From the NCBI GenBank assembly GCA_002794465.1, contig MTSL01000159.1, positions 97,790 through 129,789 on the forward strand: a stretch of DNA of 32,000 nucleotides, in the 5' to 3' direction. Each line of letters starts with the position of its first letter. The first letter of the stretch is position 1. Under the pieces are notes generated by a model. That model was not told where the DNA came from, ran no database searches, and saw only the letters and a program-made list of their open reading frames with translations. Made by a program: the position numbers and the translations under genes. Shown here one piece after another: positions 16,151-32,000 of this stretch. Source of the stretch: Paramicrosporidium saccamoebae KSL3. Taxonomy: Eukaryota > Fungi > Cryptomycota.

Positions 16151-19100
16151 TTAGTCTTCATTGGATGGGGGCTTATGAGCACGTCGGAGTGCAGTAAAAA
16201 AGGCCAAACTTCGTCTCACATCTCCAATGGCCGCTTGCCAATGCAACCGTTCGCGTGACATGTAAATCCGTTCGGGTCCCGTCGGCTTGGCTGTCCAATC
16301 GGGTAGTAGACGGATGATCAGGGCAACGGGGAGCGATAATATTCCAATTCCCAACGAAATGAGCCATAATTGCCACGATATAGGGACAGTGCTAAAAGCG
16401 GCTCCTCCAAAGAACACTAGGAAGACTTGTGCAATCACAGTTCCCACCCAGATTCCAATGAATATATTGTTTTGCAGCAGACCGCGGAAGGGATTAAGTC
16501 CGCCATTCAGGATCCGACAGTTGATTTCGTTAAAGAGCTGCATGAACACGAAGGAATTAAAAATCACCGTTCCCAGAATGGCGTTGGAGGCCGGTTCGTC
16601 GGGCAGACGGAATAATGCATGGCCTGCGTAAAGCAGGGTCAGCATGGCTGCCACCTGGAATATGGCTTGGCCAATGATCATTTTGGTCATTTTCACTGTA
16701 ATCAGACTCGAATGACTCGGCTCTGGAAAGCGTTCCAGGATTTCTTCACTCGGCCGATCGGTTGCCAAGGCTAGCGCTGCAAAAGTGTCCATAATCAGAT
16801 TGACCCAAAGCAGCTGTACTGCCGACAGCACTGATCGACTCTGTGGATCAAAAGCCGCACTGGCAAATGCAATGACCACGGCACTCACATTGACAGTCAG
16901 TTGGAATTGTAGAAACTTGCGGACACTATCGTTGACACACCGACCCCAGGCAACTGCCTTTACAATGCTCTTGAAATTGTCGTCCAATAGGACAATTGCC
17001 GAGGCTTCCTTAGCAACCTCAGTGCCAGCAATGCCCATGGCAAAACCCACATTTGCCGCCTTCAAGGCCGGTCCATCGTTTGTTCCATCACCAGTCACAG
17101 CAACCACCTCTCCCATCTCTTTCAACTTTCGCACGAGAATCTGCTTGTCCAACGGCGAAGAGCGTGCCAGTACTTGTAGTCGGGGGATCACATCTTCAAG
17201 GGCCTCGCTGGACAGTTCCCGAAAGCGGACCCCCTCCATCACCACTCCACCTCTCATCAAAATTCCGCATTTGCGAGCAATGCTTTGTGCCGTCACCACA
17301 TTGTCACCCGTCACCATTCTGACAAAGATCCCCGCCTTTTGACAGGTCGAGACGGCTTCGAGTACTCCCTCACGGAGGGGATCCTCAATGCCCACCAAGG
17401 CAATCAAGGTCATGGCCTCTAATGGCGGCCCCTCTCCCTTCCGACTCTCATATTGGCTGACTGTCATGTCACAATATGCAATCGCTATGGTCCGCAGCGA
17501 CTCTTGTGCCATGTCCATAATATGTCGTTTGAGGTTGCGCTGGTCATCCAAACTAATGGTTTCGATGCGACCCGATTTTCTAATCCACGAATTGCAAGTG
17601 TCAAGGACAATCTCAGATGCGCCTTTGCAGTGAATCCGAACCATTCCGGGACCACCCGCTTCAATCACTGTCGTCATGGATTTGCGTTCTGATGCAAAGG
17701 GAAAGACATCAATGACTTTGGCGTTGCTGCGAGTCGCTGTGTAATCAAAGTTCAATTTACGGATAAACTCGAGAAGAGCCGTCTCTGTCTTGTTCCCTAT
17801 AAACATACTTTCACCATGGCTCGAACTTTCAAAGGCCGTTGAGTTTACGGAAATTGCCTCGTCAAGACGTTCCAGTACGCTCGGATCGGCTGTTGAAAAG
17901 TCTTCACTCTTTCCCGCGTGATATTCAATGTCGCTGATTATGCCACGAACTACAGTCATTCGATTTTCTGTCAATGTGCCCGTCTTGTCTGAACATATAC
18001 TTGTGGCATTTCCCATCGTCTCACATGCTGACAGAACCCGCACCAAATTGTTGTCCTGCAGCATTCGTGTAGTGGCATAGGCCAAGGCCAAGGTTACGGC
18101 CATCGGAAGACCTTCGGGTACTGCCACCACTACCACTGTTACCGTCTCAATCACAATCAGTAAGAACCGTTCCAAGATTGTGGCCGGAGAAGGAAGGGGT
18201 GCCGAATCCAGGCTGAGCTGCACAATGTATTTAATGGTCAGCGTCAGGAACATTAACAAGGCAACAGAGGCGCCTGTCTTGGCTATCGACTCGGCAAGTC
18301 GATTGAGTTTGACCTGCAGAGGCGTTTCACTGACATCTTCCCGAAGCGCCATCATCATTCGGCCATGATAGGAATTTTCTCCAACGGCAATGCAAAGCAT
18401 CTGTCCTGTGCCATCAATAACCTTTGTGCCTGAGAGGAAGAATGGATCAAGCTTTACATCCGTATCGGGATCTCCTTTTCTAATGGCATCCGTTTCGCCC
18501 GTGGCACCAGATTCGTCGCATTGAAGATTGTGTCCAGTAATGTAAACGCCGTCACATGGAACTATTTCCTAAAATTTATGGCAATAATTGCGTGACTTAC
18601 GCCGGGCTCTAAAAGGACAATGTCGCCCACCGCAAGATCAAATATCGACAACCGATCGGGTTTGCCGTTCCGCAGGATATTTACCAGTCGATCTTCAGCC
18701 CTTTCGGACAATTTCCGGAACTGAATTTCTCGCTGGTAGTCATTTAGTGCATTCACGAGGACAACAATAACAACTGCTACCAGAATGGCGGCACCCTCAA
18801 TCCAATGCGTCAATGTTCCATCCCGCACATCTTGGTAAATCCCAATTCCAACTGAGACTAGCGCTGCCGCCGTCAGCAATAGCAAAATCTTGTCTAGTAA
18901 TGCGGCTAGCATCATGCGCCAAAGGGAAATGGGCTCCTTGGCCGGAAGGGTATTCTTGCCAAAATTTTGTTGTGAGGGGGAACGTGCACTGTCGGCCAAG
19001 CCGGTGACAAGACTAACACAGAACTGGCGAGCGAGCCCATTCACTCCGCCAAGCTGGCTCAATGCTTCGGGATTTTTTGGGTCAATCATGTGCGTCAACT

Positions 19101-19248
19101 GCGATGGAGTCAATTCGTAACAGACGCTACCCGCTTCCAGTGCAAGCTCCACGTCGCTTTGTGGACTTTGTGGCGGGCTGGATTTTTCATCCGTATGCCT
19201 TCCGCGGCCGACCAGACGACGGATTTTCTCTCCGAGTCGGCCCGCCAT
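16151..19248 (-). CDS. PMC1: P2B-type (PMCA/Pmc1) Ca2+-transporting ATPase; exons 19248-18601 and 18568-16151
   Basis: DESGATGE, VVAVPEGLPMAVT, SDKTGTLT, KGASE, MVTGDN, VTGDGTNDGPAL and QLLWVNLIMDT. A 32-nt GTAAGT..TAG intron restores LEPG-EIVPCDG. Confidence 0.95.
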
Positions 19249-19524
19249 GAATGTAAACAAGACCAGGATATGGAATGCATTAATCAGAGAAGGAAAATGA
19301 AAATGTGGCTGAGGGGTTAATCCATAATAGTCACGTTATAGAATGACTAGTGTATAGTGTATGGGGGTTTGCTACGACGATGAAGCGCAGAGATTAACTA
19401 TGCTAAATACACTGCAGGGTCAAGTCTCGTTGTTTTATTATGACACATACTGAACATTCGGGACTCTAACAAAGATACTAACAATCTTGTAATAGATATT
19501 TTCGTTACTTTGGCCGAGTTAGTC

Positions 19525-20246
19525 ATGGTAAGAGTCGTCAGTCCGCGGTCATGCTTGTAGAGTGCTGTGAAAAAGACCAAAAACTTGTCGTTTGAAGAAA
19601 AGCGCAAAAGAATGGGCGACTACTTTTTGGAGAAGCGCGACTACTTCCAATTGAAGGAGCTGGAGAAGCACCTTCCGAAGGAAAAGGGAATAGTGCAGCA
19701 ATCCGTCAAAGAGGTCTTACAAACTCTGGTAGATGATAGACTGGTGAATCTTGAAAAAATTGGAACTAGCAACTACTATTGGTCATTCCCGAGCACGGCC
19801 TTACAAACAGTACTACAATAGATACGGCTGACGGTGTAGAGGAAAACCAAGGTTGATACGCTAAAGGCGGAATTGGAAAAGTACGAGCGTCAAAGCACCG
19901 AGCTCAAAAAGCAGGTGAGTGAAGCGCTTGCATCTCGACCTGACGGCGCTGAGAGGGAAACTCTAATTAATGATTTGGAGGCATTAAAGAAGCTGAATCA
20001 CGAATATAGCACTGAATTGGAGCAATTCAAAGAGATGGATCCAGACTTGTTTGAACAAAAGAGTAAGCCATGCTTAATGATCTAACCCAGATAGAAAAGC
20101 TAATGCTGGAGGCCAAGTCGGGCTCAGATCGTTGGACTGACAATATTCTCACCCTCCAATCCCACTGTGCCAACAGCTTTAATCTTAGTCGCAGTGACTT
20201 TGCCAGCCAGTTTGGTCTTGCAGAGGACTTTGACTATGTACAATAG
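19525..20246 (+). CDS. MND1: Meiotic recombination protein Mnd1; exons 19525-19527, 19561-19809, 19840-20062, 20095-20246
   Basis: [52 protein letters not shown] and C-terminal DRWTDNI. Three introns (33, 30, 32 nt) give a 208-aa protein. Confidence 0.93.
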
Positions 20247-20389
20247 CTATGGGACTGAAATAAAGAGTGTTGAAATTGGTATGAAAGTTGATGCAAGACG
20301 ACACCCACATCGGAACTCTCGATCAAGGTGGATACTGTCTAACAGGGTCTCCCCAACTGCCACTCTCACAAAAAATAATTATTTTATAA

Positions 20390-20809
20390 ATGGGGCCGGC
20401 CGATGAACAGCTCCTTCGACAGGTACTCGCCATGCTACTCTACAGTAGACGCTTCCACCGAGCGTCTCGACCGGCTCTCGATGTCTTTTCATCAGTTTTG
20501 GAGGCTGTCATGATGCTACTATGGCGGCAAGCAGCCAGTTTTGCGAGAATGACAGACTGTCCGGTAAGCCTGCCGGTGGTGATGAATGAGCTGTTGCGGA
20601 CGGGGAAGCCGTTTTACTTGGATAGACGCGAACTGCTCGAGTATGAAGGAGAGCAGCCCGAGGGCGAAGCGGGAAGTGTGATGGAAGAGCGAGGACTGTT
20701 GAATGCACAATTGAGGGTGTTGGCAGGGACTCGGGTTGATGAAAAGCTGCATTGTATTGTAGTTGACCCGTCGGCCGACGCTGTTGAGAATCCCAATAGA
20801 AATGTATAA
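20390..20809 (+). CDS. Small bromodomain-associated (BTP) histone-fold protein, TAF3/TAF8/Spt7-like
   Basis: LLRQVLAMLL...FHRASRPALDVFSSVLEAVMMLLWRQA resembles BTP histone-fold helices. Resemblance is by eye only. Confidence 0.55.
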   Translation: MGPADEQLLRQVLAMLLYSRRFHRASRPALDVFSSVLEAVMMLLWRQAASFARMTDCPVSLPVVMNELLRTGKPFYLDRRELLEYEGEQPEGEAGSVMEERGLLNAQLRVLAGTRVDEKLHCIVVDPSADAVENPNRNV

Positions 20810-21012
20810 AAAGTTGCATGCTGGTGTCGGCGTGGGGGAAGGGTGTGACATGGTGTGATGGTGTAGTATAGAATGGTATAACGTGGCATGACAATATGTT
20901 GATATAATAACGCACTGATTTGTCAATCTTGGTACATGATACGATCGACTATCTAACAAATCCTATTTATATAACCACCTACCCTACCTACACCTACGGT
21001 CAGCAAAAAGTA

Positions 21013-21803
21013 TCAATAAATGTTCAAATAGCCATATCTACGTGCAAATACGATCAGTGCCAGGATGACTCCAATCGTGATATATGCTCGAATTTTGTCA
21101 CGGTTGATCCAGGCAACAATGCGTCTCTGTGAGGAATAGGCCATGTTTCCAACAACTTCAAAAGACTTCATGTTCAGAACAGCATGTCTAGTGGGCTCCT
21201 TTATGGGCTTCTTTGACTTTTCGGAAAACTCGGTCCAGTCTGCATTAGCAATGTACAAGAGACCATCTAGAGACGGCGAGGAAATGTTGGATCCATGCAT
21301 ATGGCCATCTTGGACCAAGATGAACGAAGGTAGTTTCTGAACGGCAAGCGCGGCAGAGATGACTGGACTATCAGAAAAAGATACTGTGGCGAGAATGGGC
21401 GGGTCTGCGGGAGGGACGCTGCAAAGCTTGGTCGCTAAATCCTTCCATAAATTCTTGTACGGCACGGAAAGGGGACACCAGTCTGCCCGTCTAAACATTA
21501 CGGTAGGGAATAGAACACTTACACCAAAATAAACCACTTGCCTTTGCGAAGCTTTGGAAGGTCGCTGTCAGTGAGCTGCATTTGGACGATGGGATCTCGT
21601 ATTGCTGCCTTCAAGCCGGCTTGGATGGGGAATTCGAAATCTCGGGCTATGTGCTCTTGGTGTTGGGCAGAGGTAGTTATATTCACAGAGTGGACAAGTG
21701 GTGCGGTTGGAGATGTGGAATTTTGCGAACCATAGTAGACCCAACCCGCGCCAGAAAACACTGCAGCTATGGTCACTGATAAGGCATGGAACGTCGAGAC
21801 CAT
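21013..21803 (-). CDS. ER membrane thioredoxin-fold protein (TMX/PDI-like) with a CxxS active site; exons 21803-21523 and 21490-21013
   Basis: A 32-nt GTAAGT..TAG intron joins KWFILV to RADWCPLS. Later LAVQKLPSFILVQDG matches the Trx 'PT' region. It has a hydrophobic N-terminus and a C-terminal TM helix AYITIGVILALIVFA. Confidence 0.75.
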
Positions 21804-21892
21804 GTCCAAGCGACTGACGGGCGAGACGTGTCAGCCAATAGGAAATAACCGACTTTTTGTTATTGAAGGATTGACAGTCAGAGCTGCTCGCA

Positions 21893-24512
21893 ATGCGCAT
21901 CCTGTCTCGTTTTGTAATTTTTCGACTTGGCGCACGAGGGTATGCCAACGTAGTTGAGACATATGCGCCCCAAACTGTCCTGAAAAAGATTCGACGCATT
22001 CAATTGCAGCCAGAAACCCCCATCGAATGTCCTGATAAGGTCGAAATACTTTGTGAAAAAAAGACTGATTCAAAAAGAGTATCTCTGGTGCTTGAGCAAT
22101 ACAGAGAATTGCAGCTTAAATATCCCAAGCACATTATTTTGATGCAGGTCGGGGATTTTTTCGAAATATTCGACAATGCCGCCAAGAATGTCAGCCAGGT
22201 TCTTGATATTGGTTTGTGTGAGAGCCGATATGGCACCACGATGACTGGTTTTCCCCTCCGTACCATGGACACGTATCTGGACCGGCTGGTAAGAGCGGGT
22301 AGCTCGCTGGTTTTGGTTGAGCAGCAAGAAGCGAGGCCACCAAACACGGCAATCACCAGGAGAGTCACTAGGATCATTACTCCGGGGACCATTACCGAGG
22401 AAAACTTGCTGGACAGTGGTACTAACAATTTCATGCTTTCAGTGGAAGAATCGGCTGACGGTTATGGGCTTGCATGGATTGATCTCTCTACGGGCTATTT
22501 TCGAATACTGGAGATTGAGGGGAAAGAACTATATAACGAGCTCGTGCGGATAAATCCAATAGAAATAATATCTGCTCCGAACTTGTGGAAGCTGGAAGAG
22601 ATGGATCGATTTGTCAAAAATCATCGCGCAGTCTTGTCGGATCTCGAGTTTCCAAAAGATTCGGCAGCGTTTGTCAAGCTCTTTGGGAGCGACTTCAATG
22701 ATACTACTTTTACAGCCTCTGAATTAGCGGCAGGACTGAGACTGCTGAATTATGTAACAGCAACTCAAATGGAGAAACGTCCATACATTGAATGCCCCCA
22801 GCGGCATAGTCAACAGGACTCGGTGCGCTTGGATGCTGCGGCACTGAGGGCACTGGAGATTTTGAGAAACAATTCAACCAACACTAAGGAGAATTCGCTT
22901 TTGGATGTAATTGACGAGACGTGTACGGCTGCAGGATCGCGTTTGTTGATTCAGAGGTTGCAGACACCACTATTGAAAATGGCAGAGATTGATAGGCGAC
23001 TTGATCAACTTGCCCTGTTTTATGAAAGAGAGGAATTGCTGACGGATATTAGGAGTTTTTTAAAAAAGTGTAAAGATTTGGAGAGGTGCTTTCAGCGGCT
23101 GGCCCTCAACCGTAGCACTGGTGGTCCCCGGGACATGCAGGCAATTCAGCAAACATTAAAACAAGCCTGTGAGATACAGCAACGACTGTGTGCCGTAGAT
23201 GCTCTGCTGGCCGCTGATTTGGGCCATCGCATTGATTCCTGTCTTCAACTGATCGATGAGCTTGAGCGGGCAATTGTAGATTCTCCCCCATCAAAGGCCT
23301 CAGATGGCAGCTTGATAAGAACAGGCTACTCTGCAGCTCTTGATGAGTTGCGTGGCGAGTCGGTGAGTCTTGAATCGAGGTGTGCCGCGCTAGTTGAACA
23401 ATATCGCAAAGAAACCAGTAAACATCATACCACAGCTCTTATGTTTAGAATCAAAGAGTTTGCGACTAGTCAACAGGAAGACGCTGGGATGGTTTGTGGA
23501 AGTAAACCGATCTGAAGGAAAACTGGAGAGTGATCGCTTTGTGCTCGACGGGCAAATTGACAAAAAGTATCGCTACAGAACTGACGAGCTTAATGGCTTG
23601 AATCGAGATTTTGCCATGGGAGGAGAAGAGATTCTAAAGGAAGAGATGCGTATCTATGAGGAGCTCCGTGGCAAGGTTATTGGCGCGGGGGACAAGATTA
23701 TGGCGACGGCAAGAACACTGGCCGAACTAGATGTCATTGCTTCCAATGCACTGCTCGCAAAGAAACGGGGATTCACCAGGCCACTATTAAAGGACAATTT
23801 TGAATTTACGGTTGAGAACGGTCGACACCCAGTTGTGGAACACAAACATGCCGATGTTGGGAGATCGTTTGTGCATAATTCGTGTGATTTGGGCCCTTCT
23901 AAACGTTTTGCATTAGTCACTGGGCCCAATATGGGAGGGAAGAGTACATTTTTGCGACAAAATGCACTGATTGCAATCATGGCCCAATGTGGAATGTATG
24001 TTCCTGCTGATAGAGCTGTGCTGGGACTGGTTGATGCAGTTTACACGAGAATCGGGGCCAGCGATGACTTGTCGCGAGATCGAAGCACCTTTATGGTGGA
24101 AATGATAGAAACGGCAAATATTTTGAATCAGGCGTCGCCCCAAAGCCTTGTGATCATGGACGAGGTGGGACGGGGAACGGCAGCCAAGGAGGGATACTCA
24201 CTGGCGTGGGGAATTTGTAAATATTTATACTCTAAAGGCTGTCGTACGCTCTTTGCCACGCACTACTCTGATCTATCTAAATTGGTCACTACTTTTCCAC
24301 ATAGTCAGTGCTTAATGTCGGCAGCACGACTGGATGCTGATGGTTTGTATTTTCTCCACCAGATATTCAAAGGCGTGGCTACAAAGTCGCATGCGATAGA
24401 AATTGCCAAGCTTGCAGGCATGCCCAAAGAAGTCCTGATATATGCATTAGAGGTTGGGGCGATTGGTGAATCTGAGAAGCCTGGAGAGTCTGGGGGGAGT
24501 AGGGTTAGTTGA
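21893..24512 (+). CDS. MSH1: Mitochondrial MutS homolog Msh1; exons 21893-23417 and 23449-24512
   Basis: Presequence-like MRILSRFVIFRLGARGYA, QVGDFFE mismatch motif, RIITPGT, TGPNMGGKSTFLRQ, STFMVEM, MDEVGRGT and FATHY. A 31-nt GTAAAC..TAG intron joins the two ORFs. Confidence 0.9.
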
Positions 24513-24595
24513 TTGAACGGTTAGTCGATTGAAATATTAGTCAATTGAATGATTACTCTACTGCACCATACCACACTGAACCGCACTACACTATA
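24505..24595. repeat. Back-to-back repeats between convergent MSH1 and CAF1
   Basis: 16-bp TTAGT(T/C)(G/A)ATTGAA-nnn x3 (24505-24552; the first copy includes the MSH1 stop), then C/A-rich 5-mers (CTACA/CCATA/CCACA). Confidence 0.8.
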
Positions 24596-24621
24596 GTAAA
24601 GCTTTAATCATGAATACAGAA

Positions 24622-25521
24622 TTATTGAACCATTGGGGGCGTAGTGCTATAAATGGCAGACGGATCAGTCGACGAAAAGGCACCCGTGATAAAGGGATTA
24701 TTTGATGGCCCATTGATCACTGGTTTAGTGGATGATTCGGCTCCTCCCCCAAGACCATATAATAGACCTTGATATTTGCCATCGTCAATTTTTTCTTCAA
24801 AGAACATGTGCCGGATTTTGAAAAAGGCCTGGAGGGTTAGTAAACTGTCACTACCAGCTTGATGTTGAGTTCCAACGCGCTCAAGACCGAGATCATCGGC
24901 GATATCCTGCAGACCTCCTTTTAGACTCTTGCAGCTCTTCATCATGTGCTTAATGTCGTAGAAATTGGGGAAAAAGATGCAAAGCAGTTCAAAAAACTCT
25001 CCCTCTTCGGCCGGAAGAGGGTTGCACGTCAGAACCTTGAGGAAATAGCCAAAGTCGTAGCCGCTGTGGAAGCTAATCCACTTGACTTCTGGAAGTAGCA
25101 CCAGTCCGGATGTCATTACAAGCTCGCCAAAGTCGCTAACGTCGATACCTCGTGATTTGTGCTGTCTAAAGTCGATACCCGAGTTGGTCAGCAAGTCTAT
25201 AGAGTCTTGAGCATAGGTGTCCTCATCCAAGTTGAATTTAAAGTTGAACTGCCAGGTGCAGACTTCTGGAGGCAAGTTGCCATGCTCGTCTGACAGGGTA
25301 ATGCCCAGCTGAATAACCCTCAACAGGTCCACGTTGCAACGCAGGGTCTGGTACACAAATTCAGACTGTGTGCGAAAATTTCCCAGCGGACGAGCAACAA
25401 TGCCCGGAAACTCGGTATCCATGGCTATATAAGGGTACTTTGGCACAAGCTCTCTGACCGCAGCCATTTCCGTCTCCAGAGTGTCGGCCCAGACATCCCT
25501 AATAAGGACCTTGCGATCCAT
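24622..25521 (-). CDS. CAF1: CCR4-NOT deadenylase Caf1/Pop2 (CNOT7/8)
   Basis: IRDVW, YIAMDTEFPG, LRCNVDLLRVIQLG, WQFNF, WISFHSGYDFGY, YDIK and HQAGSDSLLT, the DEDDh fold. First ATG at 25521. Confidence 0.96.
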   Translation of the reverse strand: MDRKVLIRDVWADTLETEMAAVRELVPKYPYIAMDTEFPGIVARPLGNFRTQSEFVYQTLRCNVDLLRVIQLGITLSDEHGNLPPEVCTWQFNFKFNLDEDTYAQDSIDLLTNSGIDFRQHKSRGIDVSDFGELVMTSGLVLLPEVKWISFHSGYDFGYFLKVLTCNPLPAEEGEFFELLCIFFPNFYDIKHMMKSCKSLKGGLQDIADDLGLERVGTQHQAGSDSLLTLQAFFKIRHMFFEEKIDDGKYQGLLYGLGGGAESSTKPVINGPSNNPFITGAFSSTDPSAIYSTTPPMVQ

Positions 25522-25536
25522 GCACCCCGGAACGGC

Positions 25537-25782
25537 ATGTCCGAAGAAACCAAGGACGACCAGACGTCCAATGTACAACAAATACTACAGTTACGTGCCA
25601 TGTATGAAATGACGACGGCCATTACTTCAAAGTGCTTCCAGACATGTCTTACCCGACTAAACCCACGCCTTGAGGATTCCGACAAAAATTGCATCTCCAA
25701 CTGTGCTGCCAACATTCTTCACATGAAGTTGCTGTTTACGCGGAGACTCATCGAGGCAGCCCAGTCTAACCAGCTTGCATAA
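25537..25782 (+). CDS. Mitochondrial IMS small Tim chaperone (Tim8/9/10/13 family)
   Basis: 81 aa with a twin CX3C motif (KCFQTC ... CISNC). The subfamily cannot be assigned by eye. Confidence 0.88.
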   Translation: MSEETKDDQTSNVQQILQLRAMYEMTTAITSKCFQTCLTRLNPRLEDSDKNCISNCAANILHMKLLFTRRLIEAAQSNQLA

Positions 25783-26062
25783 ACTGACAAACACAGTGGA
25801 CCTGGCTTAAAGGCATATGCCAGCAGGTGGATTTGAGGATTTTACGTGGTACATAGAGTAGTAGGATTATAAAAGGACGGTTGTTTTTATAGCAAGAGTC
25901 GATTATCATGCACACTGTCCACGCTCGAACAAGTACCAATGATAAATTCCTCACAGAATATAATTGGGCCGTGTCTTGATTGGCCAGCGGAGTCTCCTTG
26001 ACCTTTGACCTTTCCCCCTCGAGCTTCATCCCTCGTTCACGACGTCTTAAACTGGCACCGTC

Positions 26063-26738
26063 ATGCCCAAGATATACCAATACAAGCTGGTGCTCCTTGG
26101 CGAGTCGGCAGTGGGAAAGTCGAGCCTTGTGTTGCGTTTCGTAAAGAATTCGTTCTCGGACCATCAAGAGTCAACAATTGGAGGTATGTTTATTATGCAT
26201 GCCACTGTATGTTGTAGCGGCTTTTCTCACTCAGACACTCCAAGTCGACAAAGATACTCTCAAGTTTGAGATTTGGGACACGGCGGGACAGGAGCGCTAT
26301 AATTCCCTAGCTCCAATGTACTACCGCGGGGCTCATGCTGCCGTCGTAGTATACGATATCACAAAGCGGGTAAGGGTGTGGGTTTGAGTTGACATTTAGG
26401 ACTCGTTTGAGAGGGCAAAGAAGTGGGTCACTGAATTGCTTCGAAATGCGTCGCCGAATATCGTGATTGCGCTGGTTGGAAATAAGCTTGACTTGGCCAC
26501 TCATCGCCAAGTAACCTTGGAAGAAGGGCAGGCATATGCTGATGAAGCCAATTTGCTATTTACAGAAGCCAGTGCACGCAGCGGTGATGGAGTGAGTGAG
26601 GCATTTATCAAGATTGCCAAGAAGCTGCCCAAGACGGAGCAGCAAATGGCCTCTCCTAGATTGGCGCCGGATGCACGACGTGTAGACCTGAATCGTTCTG
26701 GTGCTGAAAGCTATCCCACCACCAATCGTTGCTGCTAG
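26063..26738 (+). CDS. RAB5: Rab5/Ypt51-family GTPase; exons 26063-26183, 26218-26369, 26400-26738
   Basis: [61 protein letters not shown] and a C-terminal CC. Introns of 34 and 30 nt. Confidence 0.95.
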
Positions 26739-26790
26739 TCTGGAGTCTGAAGCAGCCTAAAGCCAATAAAGCTGTCGCTATTTCCGTGTT

Positions 26791-26961
26791 TTGAGTGTTG
26801 TTGAGTATTGGTTGGGGTATTTTGGGTGTTGTTGGGGTATTTTGGGTGGTGTTGAGTATTGTTGAGTATTGTTGGGTATTACTACTGAGTGTCAACTACC
26901 GCATGTCGACTACCTCGCGCCGACTACCTCGTATCGACTGCCGCACTTCAACTACCGATTC
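26791..26961. repeat. Back-to-back minisatellites between convergent RAB5 and eIF2B-beta
   Basis: TTGAGTATTG-like 10-mers (26791-26880), then 14-bp TC(G/A)ACTACC-based units x5 (26892-26961). AATAAA at 26765 precedes the first array. Confidence 0.9.
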
Positions 26962-26998
26962 TACTTCTTATACTTTGTAATAAATCACAATGATATGT

Positions 26999-28124
26999 TT
27001 AGACATCAAGGGTATAATCTTCCAGGTCATACATTTCTCTAAGCAGGCGATACACGTAGGATGGTGGATGGCCTCCAGTGTTTGTAATGAAAAGACTGAC
27101 ATATGGGGAGGGGACATAGTCAAAATGTGGATTGACAATATTGACCTTTGACATTAAATCTCCATCAGCAAAGGAAAGCACAGAATCGGGATTCCCAAGA
27201 ATATTAAATGTATCATGGTTCTCGGGGTAGATGGGAGTCAGCTTGTAGAGGCCTGCAACAACACAGACGGGAGTAGAGTGGTGTTTGGCTGCAGTGGCAA
27301 TAAGCTGGCATCCAGAGGGAGCAATAAGACCTCCGTTAGCAGTGACTGCATGGCAGCCGATAATGACCTTGTTCACTCGAGCCATCAGGGCAAATATAGC
27401 AGCGTCAGAAATCAATAATGTCTCTACACCGGCAGCAGCAAGACTTTTGCAGAGATGGTGGCCTCCATAGGTGGGAGAACCTTCGGCCACAATCACCTGA
27501 AACTGGCGCTTCTTTGCGGCAGCAAGCAGAAACCTCTCCACAGCCTTTGACCTTCCAATGGTCATGATAATTTCATTCGAGTGAATATGCTCAAGGGACT
27601 GTTGGGCAAGTGTGTCAGAGACCGACTCGAGTTCGTCAATAATCTCATTGACGCCTTGAATGATGAGTTGCTTCAGCTGGTAGCATTGTCTGCTGTAATC
27701 CGTAGCAGGCGTTGTTGACTCTGCCAACAAGTTGAACATGGACGATTCGCCAGCCGTACTTCTGGTCGAATCATGGGAATCACTGTCTAACGATGTGGAC
27801 GAGTCCACCTTGCAAAGTTCCTTGGTGCTGTTTCGATATTCCTCTCGGATCAAGTGGAGGACTCTTCTAATAATATTCCCAACAGCAAATTCTACAAGAG
27901 ATTACAGCACACGGCTGAATAATGGTACCAACGGGCTGGGCTTGCAAGAGCCGCACTGAGAGCTCTCGAATGTGCTGGATGAGAGAGGCGGCGTTTGTCC
28001 ATCGCGAGTTACTAATGACAGTCCGCAGAAGTTGGGCCGTCTCTAATGCAGTATGGTTGGAGCCGTATATTTGGCGTCGCTTCAGCTGAGACACGAAATG
28101 GTCGACGCTTTGAGAAGTGGTCAT
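26999..28124 (-). CDS. GCD7: Translation initiation factor eIF2B beta subunit (Gcd7); exons 28124-27929 and 27891-26999
   Basis: LKRRQIYGS..TALETAQLLR, then a 37-nt GTACCA..TAG intron that restores AQPVEFAVGNIIRRV. Also EHIHSNEIIMT, RVNKVIIGCHAVTANGG and SLFITNTGGHPPSYVYRL. Confidence 0.93.
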
Positions 28125-28153
28125 TCCAGTGACCCTGGGCCAACCTGTACATA

Positions 28154-30113
28154 ATGTCTGGCCAGAGCTCTCCAAAGAGCGGCGTGGAAGAGGATCATGA
28201 CCAGCTGCGGAAAGCCAGCAGGACGCGGATTCAGTCGCCTGTTCAGCGCGAATTAGACTGGTTCAAACAAAAGTCACCCCGCGCCCTGCCAAAAACGATG
28301 GGATTTCACCCGCTAAACAGTCTCAACCCACAGTATAGCAGCACACGTATAAATCGTACCGTCTCTTGTGACGACGTATTTGACCAACAACGTGAACTGT
28401 CAGCTGATAAGAAGCACGCTACGTCAAATGTTGGATTGCTTACGTTTGCGGATGGATTTCGCAAATACAGTCATGCTAAAAGGGCGGCCGAAGGGCGTCG
28501 TGCTGAGGAGTGTTGTGGTAAGGGGCGCTATAGTAAGGAGCGCTGTAATGAGGAGTGTCGTAGTAAGGAGCGCTGCATCAAGGAGCGCTGTAGTGAGGAG
28601 CGTCACAACGAAGAACATTGTAGCAAGGAGCGTCGTCTTGCCTCACACAGTGGAATTTCTTCTCCTGTTTTTAACATTTCTGATGGAGAACCCGATAATA
28701 TTAGCACCGATTTGGCCGACTTGCGGAAAAGAATTCAGGTAAAATTGATACAGATGGGAGACGCTGTACGGATTATTGACAGCTCTATTGCATCAATGAC
28801 ACTGGCATTGGACTCTATCCTTAGTCGCTTTTCCTACGACAACAAGACGGTTTTATTTGGCTCTAGTAATGTAAAGTGGATATCTGGATACTTTGGAAAG
28901 GTCGGTGCATATCTCGATATTAAATTTGCACAAGTTCCATCCGAATTTGCCGATCTGATGGGCACCATTTCTTTCGGTACCGTATTGATTAGGTTTGAAT
29001 TTGACCTGCGATCGGTCGGCAAGCGGATAATACAAAGGATATTGAGAGAGTCCTTTAAAGGTCGTGTCACAATGCTGTTAGAACCTCTTGAGTATGATCC
29101 AACTTTTGAGCCTGACCCCAAGGCACTCGAGGATGGTAGTCCTGCCCGAAGCACCAGAACTAAGAGCCTCGCTCGAGATACTAGTCTTGACAGGAGAGCC
29201 TCTCGTATCTCAACACCAACCCGGCCAGCCATTCCCCTCACGGACCGGAACCCACGAATATTGTTTACGTTTCCTCCCATGGAGCTTGATGCCGTCACCA
29301 TTACAAGCAATGAGTTGCTGCACCTCCCTGAAGGGGTTTATCTTAACGACTCGCTGATTCAATTTGATCTAAAACTCATCTTGGAGCAAACGAGCGCAGA
29401 CGTCAGGGAAAGAACCCACATATTTAGTTCCTTCTTTTTCAAGAAACTGCTTGACGGAAGTCAGGCCGACTCTGTGACAAAATGCAATATTTTTGACAAA
29501 AAGTTTGTTTTTGTTCCCATCAATGAACAGTACACAATGTTAATGTCTCATTTGTAGTCTCCATTGGTATTTGGCAATGATATTCAACCCATCAGCCGCG
29601 CTCTTGAAAAGCACAAATGCTGACAGTGAGTCGAACGCACCAAATGAATCAAACGAGTCTAAAGAGTTGAAATCTTTTGGTGATCATAGATGCGTAATTG
29701 TTATTTTCGACTCACTTGGGTCTAAACACCGGCGAGTCGTTACTGAACGACTAAAGTCCTTGATTGTCGATGAGGCAAAATGGAAGAAGCAAATTGAAAT
29801 TGACAGCAAAGTCATTTCTGCAACTTATCCAAGACTCCCTCTACAGCAGAATCTCACAGATTGCGGGTGCTTTTTACTCGAATATGTAGAGCAGTTTCTG
29901 CAAAATCCCGACAAGATGATGGCGTGCATTTTACAAAAGGAAGACTTGTCAAATTGGTTCACGCCTGATGATGCAGCTCTTAGGAGGCTAAATTTGCGTA
30001 ACAGAATCGAAGACTTTGAGCAGAAATATGGCAATCCAGTGGAGACGAACCAAATGTCAGCATCTAGTGACGTTGAGGAGATTATACCCCGTACTTTAGA
30101 TTTCGCCGAATAG
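28154..30113 (+). CDS. Ulp2-like C48 SUMO protease; exons 28154-29529 and 29558-30113
   Basis: YLNDSLIQF, HIFSSFFFKKL, and a 28-nt intron restoring VPINEHLHWYLA (catalytic His). FDSLG (Asp) and QQNLTDCGCF (Cys) complete the triad. Long low-complexity N-terminus. Confidence 0.88.
28502..28636 (+). repeat. In-frame 15-bp x9 coding minisatellite in the Ulp2-like gene
   Basis: Consensus AGTAAGGAGCGCTGT, encoding SKERC-like pentapeptides. Confidence 0.9.
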
Positions 30114-30117
30114 AGTT

Positions 30118-30581
30118 TTATTGTATTTTTATGATTGTCGGTCTTCCGTGGGCACAGATGAGCGGCTTTTTGCATTTCCACAGCCTAACGAGCATATTCC
30201 TGATAGTTTCCATTGTTAGATTGTCGGTTATCTTGTATGCACCTAACGATGTCCATAAGCAAGTTTGTACTCGACATGACTACCTTTGCATGCTCTCGTT
30301 TTGAACTCGTCCATGCGCATGGTAGATTTTTTCTTGAGAAACTCGACGTCTTGTACAGTCAATCCACTATCACCAATAGCCTCACTATAATTTTCGAGCA
30401 TCTCTAAGCGAATTCGTTCATGAATTGCGTGCTGATCCCCAAGAAAGACTTGAGTTCCATGAGTAAAGAGAAGAAATCCAGTAGCAAATTTACCAATGAT
30501 AGTAAAGTCGCCTTCTTCCGCAGCATCCCCGCAGCAGCTCCGCAGCATCCCTGTGGCATCCCCATGGACTCCTGATGGCAT
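30118..30581 (-). CDS. Stand-alone MutL C-terminal (endonuclease) domain, MLH3-like, 140 aa; exons 30581-30284 and 30242-30118
   Basis: IIGKFATGFLL...DQHAIHERIRLE. A 41-nt GTAGTC..TAG intron then restores RACKGAYKITDNL, followed by KCKKPLICAHGRP. Confidence 0.85.
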
Positions 30582-30606
30582 GAATGAGTTTATTTTAGAC
30601 AAATTT

Positions 30607-31891
30607 TCAATCTTGGTCGGAACCGATATTGGTAAACTTTACAAGAGACTCCCGAGTGCAATCTCCTCCCTTGGCAGGATCAAACCTAAATCGATAGAAT
30701 GATCCATCTACGGACGCAACAAGAACAGTTGATGGATCTTGCCCAAATGTTGCAACGCATTTCTGCTCGCCAACTTTACATTGTGCAAAGCTCCATTGCG
30801 AAGAAAAATACTTTGGAAGCAAATCCTTCATAAAGAACAGACTAAAGGATAAGATTGTCGTGCTGTAATAATACCTTGAATGCTTATTCTGTCCTTCATC
30901 ATGAACAGGGCCATATTCTGCGACGAACGCTGCATTAGGGCTTACTGCATTAGGGTTGGCTGCATTTGTGGGGCCATCGAGAGAAAAAACATGAACAGTG
31001 CCCTTATCGCTGGCGACGCATAACTTGCTTCCGTCCCGACTAAACTCAACGCTAAAGATTTCTGCACGATCTGTCCCCCTTCGTAGCTCACATAGTAGCC
31101 TCCCAGATTTAATGTCAAATACTCTGATTAGCGTGCCTTTTTCCGAAGCGGTAGCCAGCAAATTTCCTGCATAGTCAACAGCCAAAGCAGCGAGCGGGCT
31201 TTCGTGAGCAGGCACAATTGACGTCACTGACGCATTTCCACCAATTCCAGTGATGCAGACATGTCCATCATGTGAGGCAGGGAATGCCATTACATTAGAG
31301 TCATTTGCAGTACTCACAGAGCATAATCCTAATGGATTGAGATTGGTGCAGAGAGAGGAATACCAGAAGGATTTTCGTGTGTCTCGTAGGCTTGGAGAAG
31401 CTTGGGAGACTTTTCTAGCGTAAACACGTGGATTTTGCCATCCAGAACGACTACAATCCTAAAGTTCAAGCGGCAACGAAACGGCGCTGTACCGGTCTTT
31501 CCTGAGGATTACTCTCTTTACTTCTGAACGAAATTCTAGCTCCGCTTGAGGCTTGCCAAGCTTTTCATCAAAGAGGATCACCTTGTTTGGAGCATATCTT
31601 GGCGACCTCCCCCCGCCGACAATTGCCAGTATATTGGTTCTGTGCAGCATTGATACCTGTCCAATGCCACCGTCCTCAAAATCTAAAAGTATATCGGCAT
31701 ATGCCCGTCATACCTCGACGCAGGACTTTGCGCACCGGCTCTGTTGAGTAGACACAAAAGCCATATTCAAATCCTGCTGCAAAACACGTTGAATCTTGAT
31801 TGAAGCTGAGGCCGAGAATTGGCATTCTTCCTGGGGCCACTGACGACAAACTGCCGGAGCGCGTGTGACTTTGACAGCTGGACATTGACAT
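30607..31891 (-). CDS. PROPPIN WD40 protein, WIPI3/4-Hsv2/Atg18 family; exons 31891-31714, 31682-31493, 31458-31364, 31328-30875, 30841-30607
   Basis: [57 protein letters not shown], the LRRG phosphoinositide motif, SDKGTVHVF and [10 protein letters not shown]. Four introns of 31-35 nt. Confidence 0.92.
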
Positions 31892-32000
31892 TGCTCAACA
31901 ATACGAGAAAATACGGAATTTATAATGTCATCAAAGTTTTTGTGTTTGTTATGGGAGAGAGATGGGGGGGGGGGCGAATGTTTATAAGGCGGATGTTTTA

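What the first reader, a model, noticed from the sequence alone, without database searches (positions are those of the whole stretch)
30118..30581. Stand-alone, miniaturised MLH3-like endonuclease domain with no ATPase half
Seen: a 140-aa protein with all MutL-family nuclease metal motifs: DQHA(x)2E(x)4E (DQHAIHERIRLE), ACK and CAHGRP. ERIRLE and CAHGRP are MLH3-type. The WIPI gene stops 25 bp upstream in a different frame, so there is no room for the N-terminal GHKL ATPase and linker. Only about 35 aa separate the first motif from ACK, so the regulatory subdomain found in PMS1/PMS2/MLH3 seems deleted too. Established: MutL-gamma (MLH1-MLH3) nicks DNA to resolve meiotic crossovers, dimerising through the CTDs. 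Inference: either a split MLH3 with the N-terminal half encoded elsewhere, or a minimal ATP-independent nuclease module docking on MLH1. I know of no described example, but could not search.
Basis: partly seen in the sequence, partly recalled or inferred. Interest (0 to 1): 0.72.

Follow-up and report, generated by a model that had tools for sequence, protein, structure and literature searches.

The report
Stand-alone mini MutL (MLH3-like) nuclease gene
The amoeba parasite Paramicrosporidium saccamoebae has a real, conserved 140-residue gene that encodes only the DNA-cutting core of an MLH3-like repair and meiosis protein, with no ATPase half, in a lineage where published gene inventories say MLH3 is missing.

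Summary
On the minus strand at 30581..30118 there is a two-exon gene. It has a 41-nt GT..AG intron at 30283..30243. It encodes a 140-aa protein with DQHAIHERIRLE, ACK and CAHGRP.

The window is the last 32 kb of contig MTSL01000159.1 of Paramicrosporidium saccamoebae. The deposited gene model misses the intron and stops at 112 aa. This probably explains why the genome paper lists Mlh3 as absent.

The gene is neither a misjoin nor a pseudogene:
- The same short gene lies next to the C48 protease gene, usually also downstream of PROPPIN/WIPI, in independent assemblies of at least five related lineages.
- At least seven relatives share the same intron position.
- dN/dS is 0.21.
- All metal-ligand residues are invariant.

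An AlphaFold model (pLDDT 86.6) superposes on the naturally minimal Aquifex MutL endonuclease domain (rmsd 1.6 Å). No MutL ATPase domain is encoded in the window or in any of the 15 fetched loci.

Classical microsporidia carry orthologues of 220-323 aa. These have the same mini domain plus a non-ATPase N-terminus.

MLH3 ancestry is favoured by signature residues and by 69% of bootstraps, but it is not proven. Pairing with the MLH1 C-terminal domain is inferred and untested.

Verdict: a new variant of a known kind, of moderate to high interest.

The parts
30118..30581 (-). Whole gene (ATG to stop) for the 140-aa stand-alone mini MutL C-terminal (endonuclease/dimerisation) domain protein
   Evidence: Splicing and translation. 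Family profile against PDB, E = 1e-20. AlphaFold pLDDT 86.6.
30284..30581 (-). Exon 1 (residues 1-99 plus the first base of G100)
   Evidence: The same exon boundary is seen in L004 and L002.
30243..30283 (-). 41-nt phase-1 GT..AG intron, directly after ACK-G. It contains an in-frame stop and its length is not a multiple of 3.
   Evidence: Relatives have an intron at the identical position and phase: 35 nt (L004), 38 nt (L002), and 39-48 nt inferred from in-frame read-through in P0058, P0006, P0013 and P0017. The C48 gene in this window has a 28-nt intron, so very short introns are normal in this genome.
30118..30242 (-). Exon 2 (rest of G100, residues 101-140, stop codon)
   Evidence: dN/dS of exon 2 against L004 is 0.21.
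30510..30581 (-). Unconserved, predicted-disordered N-terminal tail (residues 1-24)
   Evidence: pN is 0.68 against L004. pLDDT is 48-56. The tail is absent in L002.
30402..30437 (-). Metal-site motif DQHA(X)2E(X)4E = DQHAIHERIRLE (D49-E60)
   Evidence: Invariant D, Q, H, A, E, E in 44 and in 16 aligned sequences.
30294..30401 (-). 36-residue helical connector (residues 61-96) in place of the ~100-130-residue regulatory subdomain
   Evidence: DQH-to-ACK spacing is 48 here, against 101-164 in canonical CTDs. The model shows two short helices, 76-83 and 90-100.
30285..30293 (-). ACK motif (A97-K99; C98 is a metal ligand by homology)
   Evidence: C98 is invariant.
30139..30156 (-). CAHGRP motif (C129-P134; C129 and H131 are metal ligands by homology)
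30582..30606 (-). 25-nt spacer between the PROPPIN stop and the mini-gene ATG
30607..31317 (-). Context: last exon of the upstream PROPPIN/WIPI gene, on the same strand
   Evidence: Pfam PROPPIN. This adjacency is conserved in L002-L004 and L009-L011.
28154..30113 (+). Context: convergent Ulp1/SENP-type Peptidase_C48 gene. Its stop lies 4 nt from the mini gene's stop.
   Evidence: The neighbour is conserved in L002, L003, L006-L008, L010, L011 and L013.

Best explanation
This is a genuine, spliced gene under purifying selection in Paramicrosporidium saccamoebae. It encodes only the catalytic/dimerisation subdomain of a MutL-family endonuclease. It has no GHKL ATPase, no linker and no regulatory (clamp-binding) subdomain.

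It belongs to an old family of ATPase-less MutL C-terminal proteins shared by Paramicrosporidium-like Rozellomycota (106-163 aa) and classical Microsporidia (220-323 aa, with an unrelated N-terminal region). The family most probably descends from MLH3.

Shown:
- the gene structure;
- the fold;
- the five conserved metal ligands (H51, E55, C98, C129, H131);
- the stand-alone arrangement;
- purifying selection.

Inferred:
- The protein binds two metal ions and nicks DNA, as other MutL endonuclease domains do.
- It most likely does so as the nuclease subunit of a lopsided heterodimer with the C-terminal domain of full-length MLH1. MLH1 would then supply the only ATPase and the contacts to partner proteins, giving a stripped-down MutL-gamma for crossover resolution and/or mismatch repair.
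For: Gene model and motifs.

Organism: contig MTSL01000159.1 of GCA_002794465.1; MTSL is the P. saccamoebae genome accession.

Conserved stand-alone arrangement in independent assemblies: L002/L003, L004, L006-L008, L009, L010/L011, L013/L014.

Same intron position in at least seven relatives.

Selection: dN/dS is 0.21 at dS 0.66 over the core, while the N-terminal tail is unconstrained.

Invariant residues: D, Q, H, A, E, E and C98 are invariant, and C129, H131, G, R, P are at least 90% conserved, in 44 sequences. All are invariant in the 16 ATPase-less members.

Structure: AlphaFold pLDDT 86.6 and pTM 0.81. Foldseek finds the Aquifex minimal MutL endonuclease domain 5b42/8h1g at rmsd 1.6 Å and TM 0.78-0.79, plus yeast PMS1 and MLH3 CTDs.

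No MutL N-terminal domain in the window or 15 loci, nor in the window's large ORFs.

Microsporidian orthologues (Hamiltosporidium, Pseudoloma, Conglomerata, Edhazardia, Astathelohania, Gurleya, Vairimorpha, Spraguea) have the mini domain. Their N-terminus has no Pfam, hhalign or Foldseek similarity to a GHKL domain.

MLH3 affinity:
- ERIRLE and CAHGRP are shared with yeast Mlh3, and not with yeast Pms1 or Aquifex MutL.
- Diagnostic columns agree: I57, L59, G100, K103 and C123, plus a non-Trp hydrophobic at residue 127 (F in most family members, L here), where PMS-type sequences have Y/F, F, K/T/S, M, L and W.
- The four-cluster bootstrap groups the family with MLH3 in 69% of replicates.

Literature:
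- Isolated or minimal MutL CTDs are dimeric metal-dependent nucleases (PMC10366529).
- The equivalent yeast Mlh3 ligands H525, E529, C670, C701 and H703 are essential, and the endonuclease motifs overlap the Mlh1-interaction domain (PMC5578695).
- The genome paper lists MLH1, PMS1 and Msh4 as present.
Against: - No expression, splicing or protein data were available here.
- The rest of the genome could not be searched for an orphan N-terminal half.
- The partner (MLH1 or self) is untested.
- Profile scores do not separate MLH3 from PMS1 or bacterial MutL (77.1, 76.4 and 75.7 bits).
- A neighbour-joining tree put the PMS-type sequences beside the Rozellomycota-type members. For that subgroup alone the MLH3 grouping has only 51% support.
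- In yeast, Mlh3 ATP-binding and linker mutations impair function (PMC5578695), so an ATPase-less MLH3 runs against the canonical mechanism.
- The gene the genome paper lists as msh5 looks like a bacterial-type MSH1. The presence of a complete MutS-gamma partner is therefore uncertain.
Confidence: 0.6

Rival explanations
1. Homodimeric stand-alone nickase. The mini protein pairs with itself, as the Aquifex MutL C-terminal domain does, and works independently of MLH1.
For: The best structural match is the homodimeric Aquifex CTD. Bacterial CTDs alone have nuclease activity (references cited in PMC10366529).
Against: The family resembles the eukaryotic MLH3/PMS subunits. These are obligate partners of MLH1, whose C-terminus completes the active site (PMC5578695). 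The signature residues are of MLH3 type.
Confidence: 0.2
2. Split MLH3. The ATPase and linker half is encoded by a separate gene elsewhere, and the two halves reassemble through MLH1 or directly.
For: The window ends 1.4 kb upstream of the gene, at the contig end, and the rest of the genome was not searchable here.
Against: The genome paper's inventory finds only MLH1 and PMS1-type MutL genes in P. saccamoebae and in 20 related genomes. No N-terminal domain was found in 15 loci. Microsporidian orthologues carry a non-ATPase N-terminus in cis, with no sign of a GHKL domain.
Confidence: 0.08
3. The family derives from a different source, not MLH3: a duplicate of the PMS1 C-terminal domain, or a transferred prokaryotic MutL domain. 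The mechanism would be unchanged.
For: Equal profile scores to yeast PMS1, B. subtilis MutL and yeast MLH3. In the NJ tree PMS-type sequences sit next to the Rozellomycota-type members. The 'KITD' after ACKGA has Ile, as PMS-type sequences do. Some prokaryotic MutLs also have ERIRLE/CAHGRP, for example P0115.
Against: 69% of bootstraps (82% for the microsporidian members) group the family with MLH3, 26% with PMS and 5% with bacterial sequences. Five or six diagnostic columns agree with MLH3 against PMS. Among JGI-named fragments the highest-scoring eukaryotic hits are named MLH3 (100, 95 and 92 bits) and the PMS2-named ones score 91, 90 and 86. The spliceosomal intron and the fungal-type neighbourhood argue against recent transfer.
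Confidence: 0.2
4. Catalytically dead MLH1-binding regulator, or a decaying remnant or annotation artefact.
For: Pfam MutL_C is below its threshold. The deposited model is a 112-aa hypothetical protein.
Against: All metal ligands and the GRP turn are invariant across the ATPase-less family. dN/dS is 0.21. The intron and the synteny are conserved across lineages as low as about 40% identical. The fold is predicted with high confidence.
Confidence: 0.04

Closest known systems
MLH3, the endonuclease subunit of MutL-gamma (MLH1-MLH3); yeast CTD structures 6RMN/6SHX
   Same: The metal-site motifs DQHA(X)2E(X)4E with ERIRLE, AC[KRH]GA.K and CAHGRP. An extra Cys six residues before the CAHGRP Cys. 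A short C-terminal tail. The fold of the dimerisation/catalytic subdomain.
   Different: No GHKL ATPase, no linker arm and no regulatory subdomain: 140 aa against 715 aa in yeast. Orthology is favoured but not proven.
Aquifex aeolicus MutL C-terminal endonuclease domain (5B42, 5Z42, 8H1G)
   Same: A natural MutL endonuclease domain without the regulatory subdomain. The model superposes at rmsd 1.6 Å and TM 0.79. Same metal motifs.
   Different: In Aquifex the domain is the C-terminal part of a full-length MutL with an ATPase, and it is homodimeric with CPHGRP. Here the domain is a separate gene product, carries a 36-residue helical connector, and has eukaryotic MLH3-like signatures.
PMS1 (yeast) / PMS2 (human) C-terminal domain of MutL-alpha (4E4W, 4FMN)
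   Same: Top Foldseek and profile hit. Same catalytic architecture. The active site is completed by MLH1.
   Different: PMS-type signatures (DE[KR]YNFE, ACR.SIMI, PW.C) are not shared. PMS proteins have a regulatory subdomain with a PCNA motif and an ATPase.
Database-only microsporidian 'putative MutL-like / MutL C-terminal dimerisation domain' proteins (e.g. Hamiltosporidium TBU00203.1, Pseudoloma KRH94266.1, Edhazardia EJW01741.1, Vairimorpha WUR02884.1)
   Same: The same mini domain with 27-35 residues between the motifs. Shared family-specific residues, for example the invariant Lys three residues before ACK. No ATPase.
   Different: They carry a poorly conserved 120-220-residue N-terminal region of unknown fold and lack the intron. 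None has been discussed in the literature I could search.
Oopsacas minuta (glass sponge) LOD99_13526 and six similar ENA clusters
   Same: A 240-250-aa product with a MutL C-terminal domain that has only 35-40 residues between the motifs. No ATPase domain within 10 kb on either side.
   Different: These cluster inside canonical MLH3 (PFQCAHGRPS, a long C-tail), not with the microsporidian/Rozellomycota family, so the loss is probably independent. It is not verified that the gene model is complete.

Membership tests
MutL-family endonuclease C-terminal domain | DQHA(X)2E(X)4E motif | tested here: met
   DQHAIHERIRLE, residues 49-60. Invariant in the alignments.
MutL-family endonuclease C-terminal domain | ACR/SC[KR] and C(P/A/N)HGRP motifs supplying the Cys/His metal ligands | tested here: met
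   A97-C98-K99 and C129-A-H131-G-R-P134. Conserved.
MutL-family endonuclease C-terminal domain | Fold of the dimerisation/catalytic subdomain | tested here: met
   AlphaFold pLDDT 86.6. Foldseek probability 1.00 to PMS1, MLH3, Aquifex, B. subtilis and N. gonorrhoeae CTDs. Aquifex match at rmsd 1.6 Å.
MutL-family endonuclease C-terminal domain | Pfam MutL_C (PF08676) gathering score | tested here: not met
   19.6 bits against a cut-off of 25. Only profile positions 1-36 of 142 match, because the regulatory-subdomain part is absent.
MutL-family endonuclease C-terminal domain | Regulatory subdomain with the clamp (PCNA/beta) binding motif | tested here: not met
   Only 36 residues lie between E60 and A97, against about 100-130 in canonical CTDs. 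The model shows two short helices only.
MutL-family endonuclease C-terminal domain | Metal-dependent DNA nicking activity | not testable with these tools
   Needs purified protein.
Eukaryotic MLH3 (MutL-gamma subunit) | N-terminal GHKL ATPase plus transducer domain in the same polypeptide | tested here: not met
   The upstream gene ends 25 nt before the ATG. tblastn with five N-terminal domains gives nothing with E < 0.1 in the window or 15 loci.
Eukaryotic MLH3 (MutL-gamma subunit) | MLH3-type signature residues in the catalytic subdomain | tested here: met
   ERIRLE, ACKGA.K, C123 and CAHGRP match the MLH3 column consensus, and differ from PMS-type at five or six columns. They are shared with yeast Mlh3.
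Eukaryotic MLH3 (MutL-gamma subunit) | Phylogenetic placement within MLH3 | tested here: inconclusive
   Four-cluster bootstrap: 69% MLH3, 26% PMS, 5% bacterial. For the Rozellomycota-type members alone: 51/40/9. The NJ tree is unresolved.
Eukaryotic MLH3 (MutL-gamma subunit) | Heterodimer with MLH1 through the C-terminal domains | not testable with these tools
Minimal (regulatory-subdomain-less) MutL CTD of the Aquifex type | Catalytic subdomain directly reconnected, without the regulatory subdomain | tested here: met
   Structural match with TM 0.79 normalised on the 101-residue target. The literature statement that Aquifex lacks the subdomain is in PMC10366529.
Minimal (regulatory-subdomain-less) MutL CTD of the Aquifex type | Being part of a full-length bacterial MutL with ATPase; CPHGRP; bacterial descent | tested here: not met
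   This is a separate eukaryotic gene with a spliceosomal intron and CAHGRP. It groups with bacterial sequences in only 5% of bootstraps.

The most novel reading that the evidence does not exclude
Microsporidia and their Rozellomycota relatives have kept, for their whole history, a natural 'minimal MutL-gamma'. In it the endonuclease subunit is reduced to a ~115-residue catalytic/dimerisation core that works with full-length MLH1. If so, the MLH3 ATPase, linker and PCNA-binding regulatory subdomain are dispensable for a biologically useful MutL nuclease. It would also mean the clade has not lost MLH3, as published inventories state. Glass sponges may have reached a similar state independently.
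Probability: 0.4. Interest if true: 0.78.

Novelty: new variant of a known kind. Interest (0 to 1): 0.62.

Why it matters
MutL endonucleases are thought to need an ATP-driven N-terminal clamp and, in eukaryotes, PCNA contacts to license cutting. A selected, ATPase-less, regulatory-subdomain-less paralogue is a natural experiment on which parts of MLH3 are essential. It also offers a very small, tractable model for the MutL active site.

The finding corrects the record for this genome and clade. The P. saccamoebae genome paper and its 21-species table list Mlh3 as absent everywhere (PMC5701793). Yet an MLH3-like nuclease gene is present here, mis-modelled as a 112-aa hypothetical protein. It is also present in many microsporidia. 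This bears on whether these parasites can make interference-type meiotic crossovers.

Tried and rejected
- Misjoin or assembly artefact: rejected. The window end is the contig end, 1.4 kb upstream, but the PROPPIN-mini-C48 order recurs in independent assemblies.

- Pseudogene: rejected by dN/dS, the conserved intron and the invariant ligands.

- Trachipleistophora hominis 145-aa protein as an independent 'stand-alone' example: rejected. Its ORF runs open upstream into a ~1-kb run of N. Gap-free relatives are 220-323 aa.

- A functional link to the neighbouring MutS gene ('msh5' by locus-tag order): rejected. It is a full-length bacterial-type MutS, i.e. MSH1-like.

- The microsporidian N-terminal region as a degenerate ATPase: no support from Pfam at E <= 1, hhalign (probability 0.03) or Foldseek on an AlphaFold model.

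- Separating MLH3 from PMS1 by profile score against solved structures: uninformative.

- Literature searches for an ATPase-less MutL or MLH3 found nothing.

Full report
**Observation**

Translating the minus strand of 30050-30720 shows the protein split over two frames. Removing a 41-nt GT..AG intron (30283-30243) that starts right after the codons for ACK-G joins them. The result is one 140-codon reading frame from the ATG at 30581 to the stop ending at 30118.

The product carries DQHAIHERIRLE (residues 49-60), ACK (97-99) and CAHGRP (129-134). The PROPPIN/WIPI ORF on the same strand stops at 30607, 25 nt before the ATG. The convergent C48 protease gene stops at 30113, 4 nt from the mini gene's stop.

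Very short introns are normal in this genome. The C48 gene becomes a single 643-codon frame when a 28-nt GT..AG intron at 29530-29557 is removed.

**Source**

The unspliced product (P0001, 112 aa) is encoded on NCBI contig MTSL01000159.1 of GCA_002794465.1. Window base 32000 is the contig end. MTSL00000000 is the Paramicrosporidium saccamoebae genome (PMC5701793).

The deposited model is the 112-aa read-through product. It lacks CAHGRP and has no Pfam hit. The genome paper states that Mlh3 is the only meiosis-related gene missing from this species, and that it is absent from all 21 Microsporidia/Rozellomycota genomes compared.

**Is it real?**

Homologues were found with 78%, 45% and 40% identity. 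The loci of the 78% and 45% relatives show the same order: PROPPIN, then the mini gene, then (where the contig extends that far) the convergent C48 gene. They also show an intron at the identical position and phase, 35 and 38 nt long.

Further environmental relatives of 106-163 aa fall into three groups:
- some read through an in-frame intron of 39-48 nt at that position;
- some stop inside it;
- some lack it.

Their loci repeat the arrangement (L009, L010/L011). Alternatively they have a divergently transcribed upstream gene (L006-L008, with 1.1 kb free of sense-strand ORFs, and L013/L014).

Between the window and the 78% relative, the conserved core has dN/dS = 0.21 at dS = 0.66. The first 24 residues are unconstrained. 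In a 16-member alignment of the ATPase-less family, D, Q, H, A, E, R, E of the first motif, A-C of the second and C-H-G-R-P of the third are all invariant. A misjoin, a pseudogene and a chance ORF are therefore excluded.

**No ATPase**

tblastn was run with the N-terminal 260-400 residues of five full-length MLH3/PMS-type proteins. It gives nothing below E = 0.1 in the window or in any of 15 fetched loci. The C-terminal domains of three of the same proteins detect the mini gene in every locus that carries it.

The other large ORFs of the window are ordinary housekeeping genes:
- WH1/PBD protein, two HAD hydrolases, CorA, TAF7;
- Brr2-type helicase, P-type ATPase, Mnd1, MutS;
- CAF1, Arf, eIF2B subunit, C48 protease, PROPPIN.

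The rest of the genome could not be searched with the tools available.

**Fold**

An AlphaFold2 model built on a 44-sequence alignment has mean pLDDT 86.6 and pTM 0.81. The core is above 90 and only residues 1-24 are poorly predicted.

Foldseek against the PDB returns only MutL-family C-terminal domains with significant scores. The best superposition is the Aquifex aeolicus MutL endonuclease domain (5b42, 8h1g; rmsd 1.6 Å, TM 0.78-0.79 on the 101-residue target). Yeast PMS1 and MLH3 CTDs match over the catalytic subdomain only.

[quoted passage not shown] The window protein is therefore the catalytic/dimerisation subdomain, with a 36-residue two-helix connector where other eukaryotic MutL homologues have 100-130 residues.

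**Wider family**

An exhaustive profile search gave 10,744 hits, and the best ones are short proteins. Classical microsporidia carry 220-323-aa proteins with the same mini domain (27-35 residues between the motifs). They also have a poorly conserved N-terminal region. The species are Hamiltosporidium, Pseudoloma, Conglomerata, Edhazardia, Astathelohania, Gurleya, Vairimorpha (on a gap-free chromosome) and Spraguea (partial).

That N-terminal region has no Pfam match at E <= 1 and no hhalign similarity to MLH3 N-terminal domains (probability 0.03). An AlphaFold model of it has no PDB structural match.

The 145-aa Trachipleistophora protein, the first named hit, is probably truncated. Its ORF is open upstream into a ~1-kb run of N.

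These proteins carry automatic names ('putative MutL-like DNA mismatch repair protein'). I found no paper that discusses them or any ATPase-less MutL or MLH3.

**MLH3 or not?**

ERIRLE and CAHGRP are shared with yeast Mlh3, and not with yeast Pms1 (DEKYNFE, CPHGRP) or Aquifex MutL.

I aligned 102 columns of the catalytic subdomain from 56 sequences. The family agrees with MLH3 and differs from PMS-type sequences at window residues I57, L59, G100, K103, C123 and L127, the last being F in most family members and W in PMS-type sequences. The microsporidian members also share the MLH3 Phe in GAIKF. The Paramicrosporidium-type members have Ile there, as PMS-type sequences do.

A four-cluster distance test with 1,000 bootstraps gave:

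| Subset | With MLH3 | With PMS | With bacterial MutL |
|---|---|---|---|
| Whole family | 69% | 26% | 5% |
| Microsporidia alone | 82% | 16% | 2% |
| Paramicrosporidium-type alone | 51% | 40% | 9% |

All. A neighbour-joining tree is unresolved, and profile scores against solved PMS1, B. subtilis MutL and MLH3 domains are equal. MLH3 descent is therefore the best reading, but it is not settled. It fits the published inventory, in which MLH1 and PMS1 are already accounted for.

**Mechanism**

Shown: a compact MutL catalytic/dimerisation fold with the five ligand positions H51, E55, C98, C129 and H131 conserved under selection. These correspond to yeast Mlh3 H525, E529, C670, C701 and H703, which are essential for mismatch repair and crossing over (PMC5578695).

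Inferred from established knowledge of MutL-alpha and MutL-gamma: the endonuclease motifs overlap the MLH1-interaction domain. The most economical model is therefore a heterodimer of this protein with the MLH1 C-terminal domain. MLH1 would provide the only ATPase and the partner contacts.

Without a regulatory subdomain, licensing by PCNA through that surface would be lost. Without an N-terminal domain, ATP-driven N-terminal dimerisation is impossible.

A homodimeric Aquifex-like nickase is the main rival. A meiotic role is plausible, because the genome paper reports most meiotic genes, but it is untested.

**Side finding that weakens one contextual argument**

The MutS gene 6 kb away (21893-24512) is, by locus-tag order, probably the one listed as msh5 in the genome paper. 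It is in fact a full-length bacterial-type MutS. It scores 331 + 395 bits on the NCBIfam MutS equivalog over model positions 4-785 of 793. It scores 197 bits to E. coli MutS against 48 bits to MSH3/MSH6, and it has a MutS_I domain. It therefore looks like mitochondrial MSH1, not MSH5.

**A possibly parallel case**

The glass sponge Oopsacas minuta has an annotated 244-aa protein with a MutL C-terminal domain with 37 residues between the motifs. A P5-type ATPase gene ends about 100 nt upstream, and there is no MutL N-terminal domain within 10 kb. Six similar ENA clusters exist. In the tree these sit inside canonical MLH3. Whether the models are complete was not verified.

**Verdict**

It is a new variant of a known kind: a MutL-family, probably MLH3-derived endonuclease reduced to its catalytic core and encoded alone. 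It is conserved across Rozellomycota-like lineages and Microsporidia, and the literature has overlooked it because of a missed 41-nt intron and reliance on reciprocal BLAST. Biochemical function and partner remain to be shown.

Noticed in passing
window 21893-24512 (+): The MutS gene here is a full-length bacterial-type MutS (MSH1-like, probably mitochondrial). It scores 726 bits in total on the NCBIfam MutS equivalog, 197 bits to E. coli MutS against 48 to MSH3/MSH6, and has a MutS_I domain. By locus-tag order (mnd1 PSACC_02425 plus three genes) it is probably the gene listed as 'msh5' (PSACC_02428) in the genome paper, so that call looks doubtful.
   Followed up: partly
window 30243-30581 (-): The deposited gene model (112 aa) reads through the 41-nt intron to a stop, loses the CAHGRP motif and has no Pfam hit. 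This probably explains why Mlh3 was reported absent from this genome.
   Followed up: yes
window 29530-29557 (+): A 28-nt GT..AG intron in the C48 protease gene. Removing it gives one 643-codon frame that matches an intron-less homologue in L006. Introns in this genome are extremely short (28-41 nt seen).
   Followed up: partly
window 30113-30118 and 30582-30606: The stop codons of the convergent C48 and mini genes are 4 nt apart. In L013 the two genes overlap by 4 nt. The PROPPIN stop is 25 nt from the mini ATG. Promoter and terminator signals must lie inside neighbouring genes, or transcripts must overlap, as described for microsporidia.
   Followed up: no
L001 2620-4292 (Trachipleistophora hominis JH993804.1): The annotated 145-aa 'MutL, dimerization' protein abuts a ~1-kb run of N, and its reading frame stays open for 65 codons upstream into the gap. 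The true protein is probably ~250-320 aa, like other microsporidian orthologues.
   Followed up: partly
L012 10001-10735 (Oopsacas minuta JAKMXF010000011.1): A glass-sponge 244-aa MutL_C protein (LOD99_13526) has only 37 residues between DQHA..E and ACH, and no MutL N-terminal domain within 10 kb. Six similar ENA clusters exist (P0020, P0025, P0030, P0031, P0033, P0036). This may be an independent loss of the ATPase in MLH3.
   Followed up: partly
P0054 and relatives (alignment A3), residues ~1-200: The microsporidian orthologues share an N-terminal region that is predicted partly folded (pLDDT 70-90 in stretches). It has no Pfam, hhalign or PDB structural match. Its origin and role are unknown.
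   Followed up: partly
L013 (GCA_016307145.1 JADMIO011701063.1) and window 16151-30581: A block of neighbours (P-type ATPase, Mnd1, C48, eIF2B subunit, Arf, CAF1) is shared between the window and a contig in an unrelated very large WGS project. That assembly probably contains a Paramicrosporidium-like organism as a passenger.
   Followed up: no
window 31964-31974: A run of 11 G lies 26 nt before the end of the contig (window end = contig end). This is a likely cause of the assembly break.
   Followed up: no
P0024, P0034, P0257: Short annotated 'MutL C-terminal' proteins (213-242 aa) with a full-size CTD occur in a bee (Colletes gigas), a bug (Nesidiocoris tenuis) and a fluke (Paragonimus westermani). 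They may be partial gene models or further ATPase-less forms.
   Followed up: no
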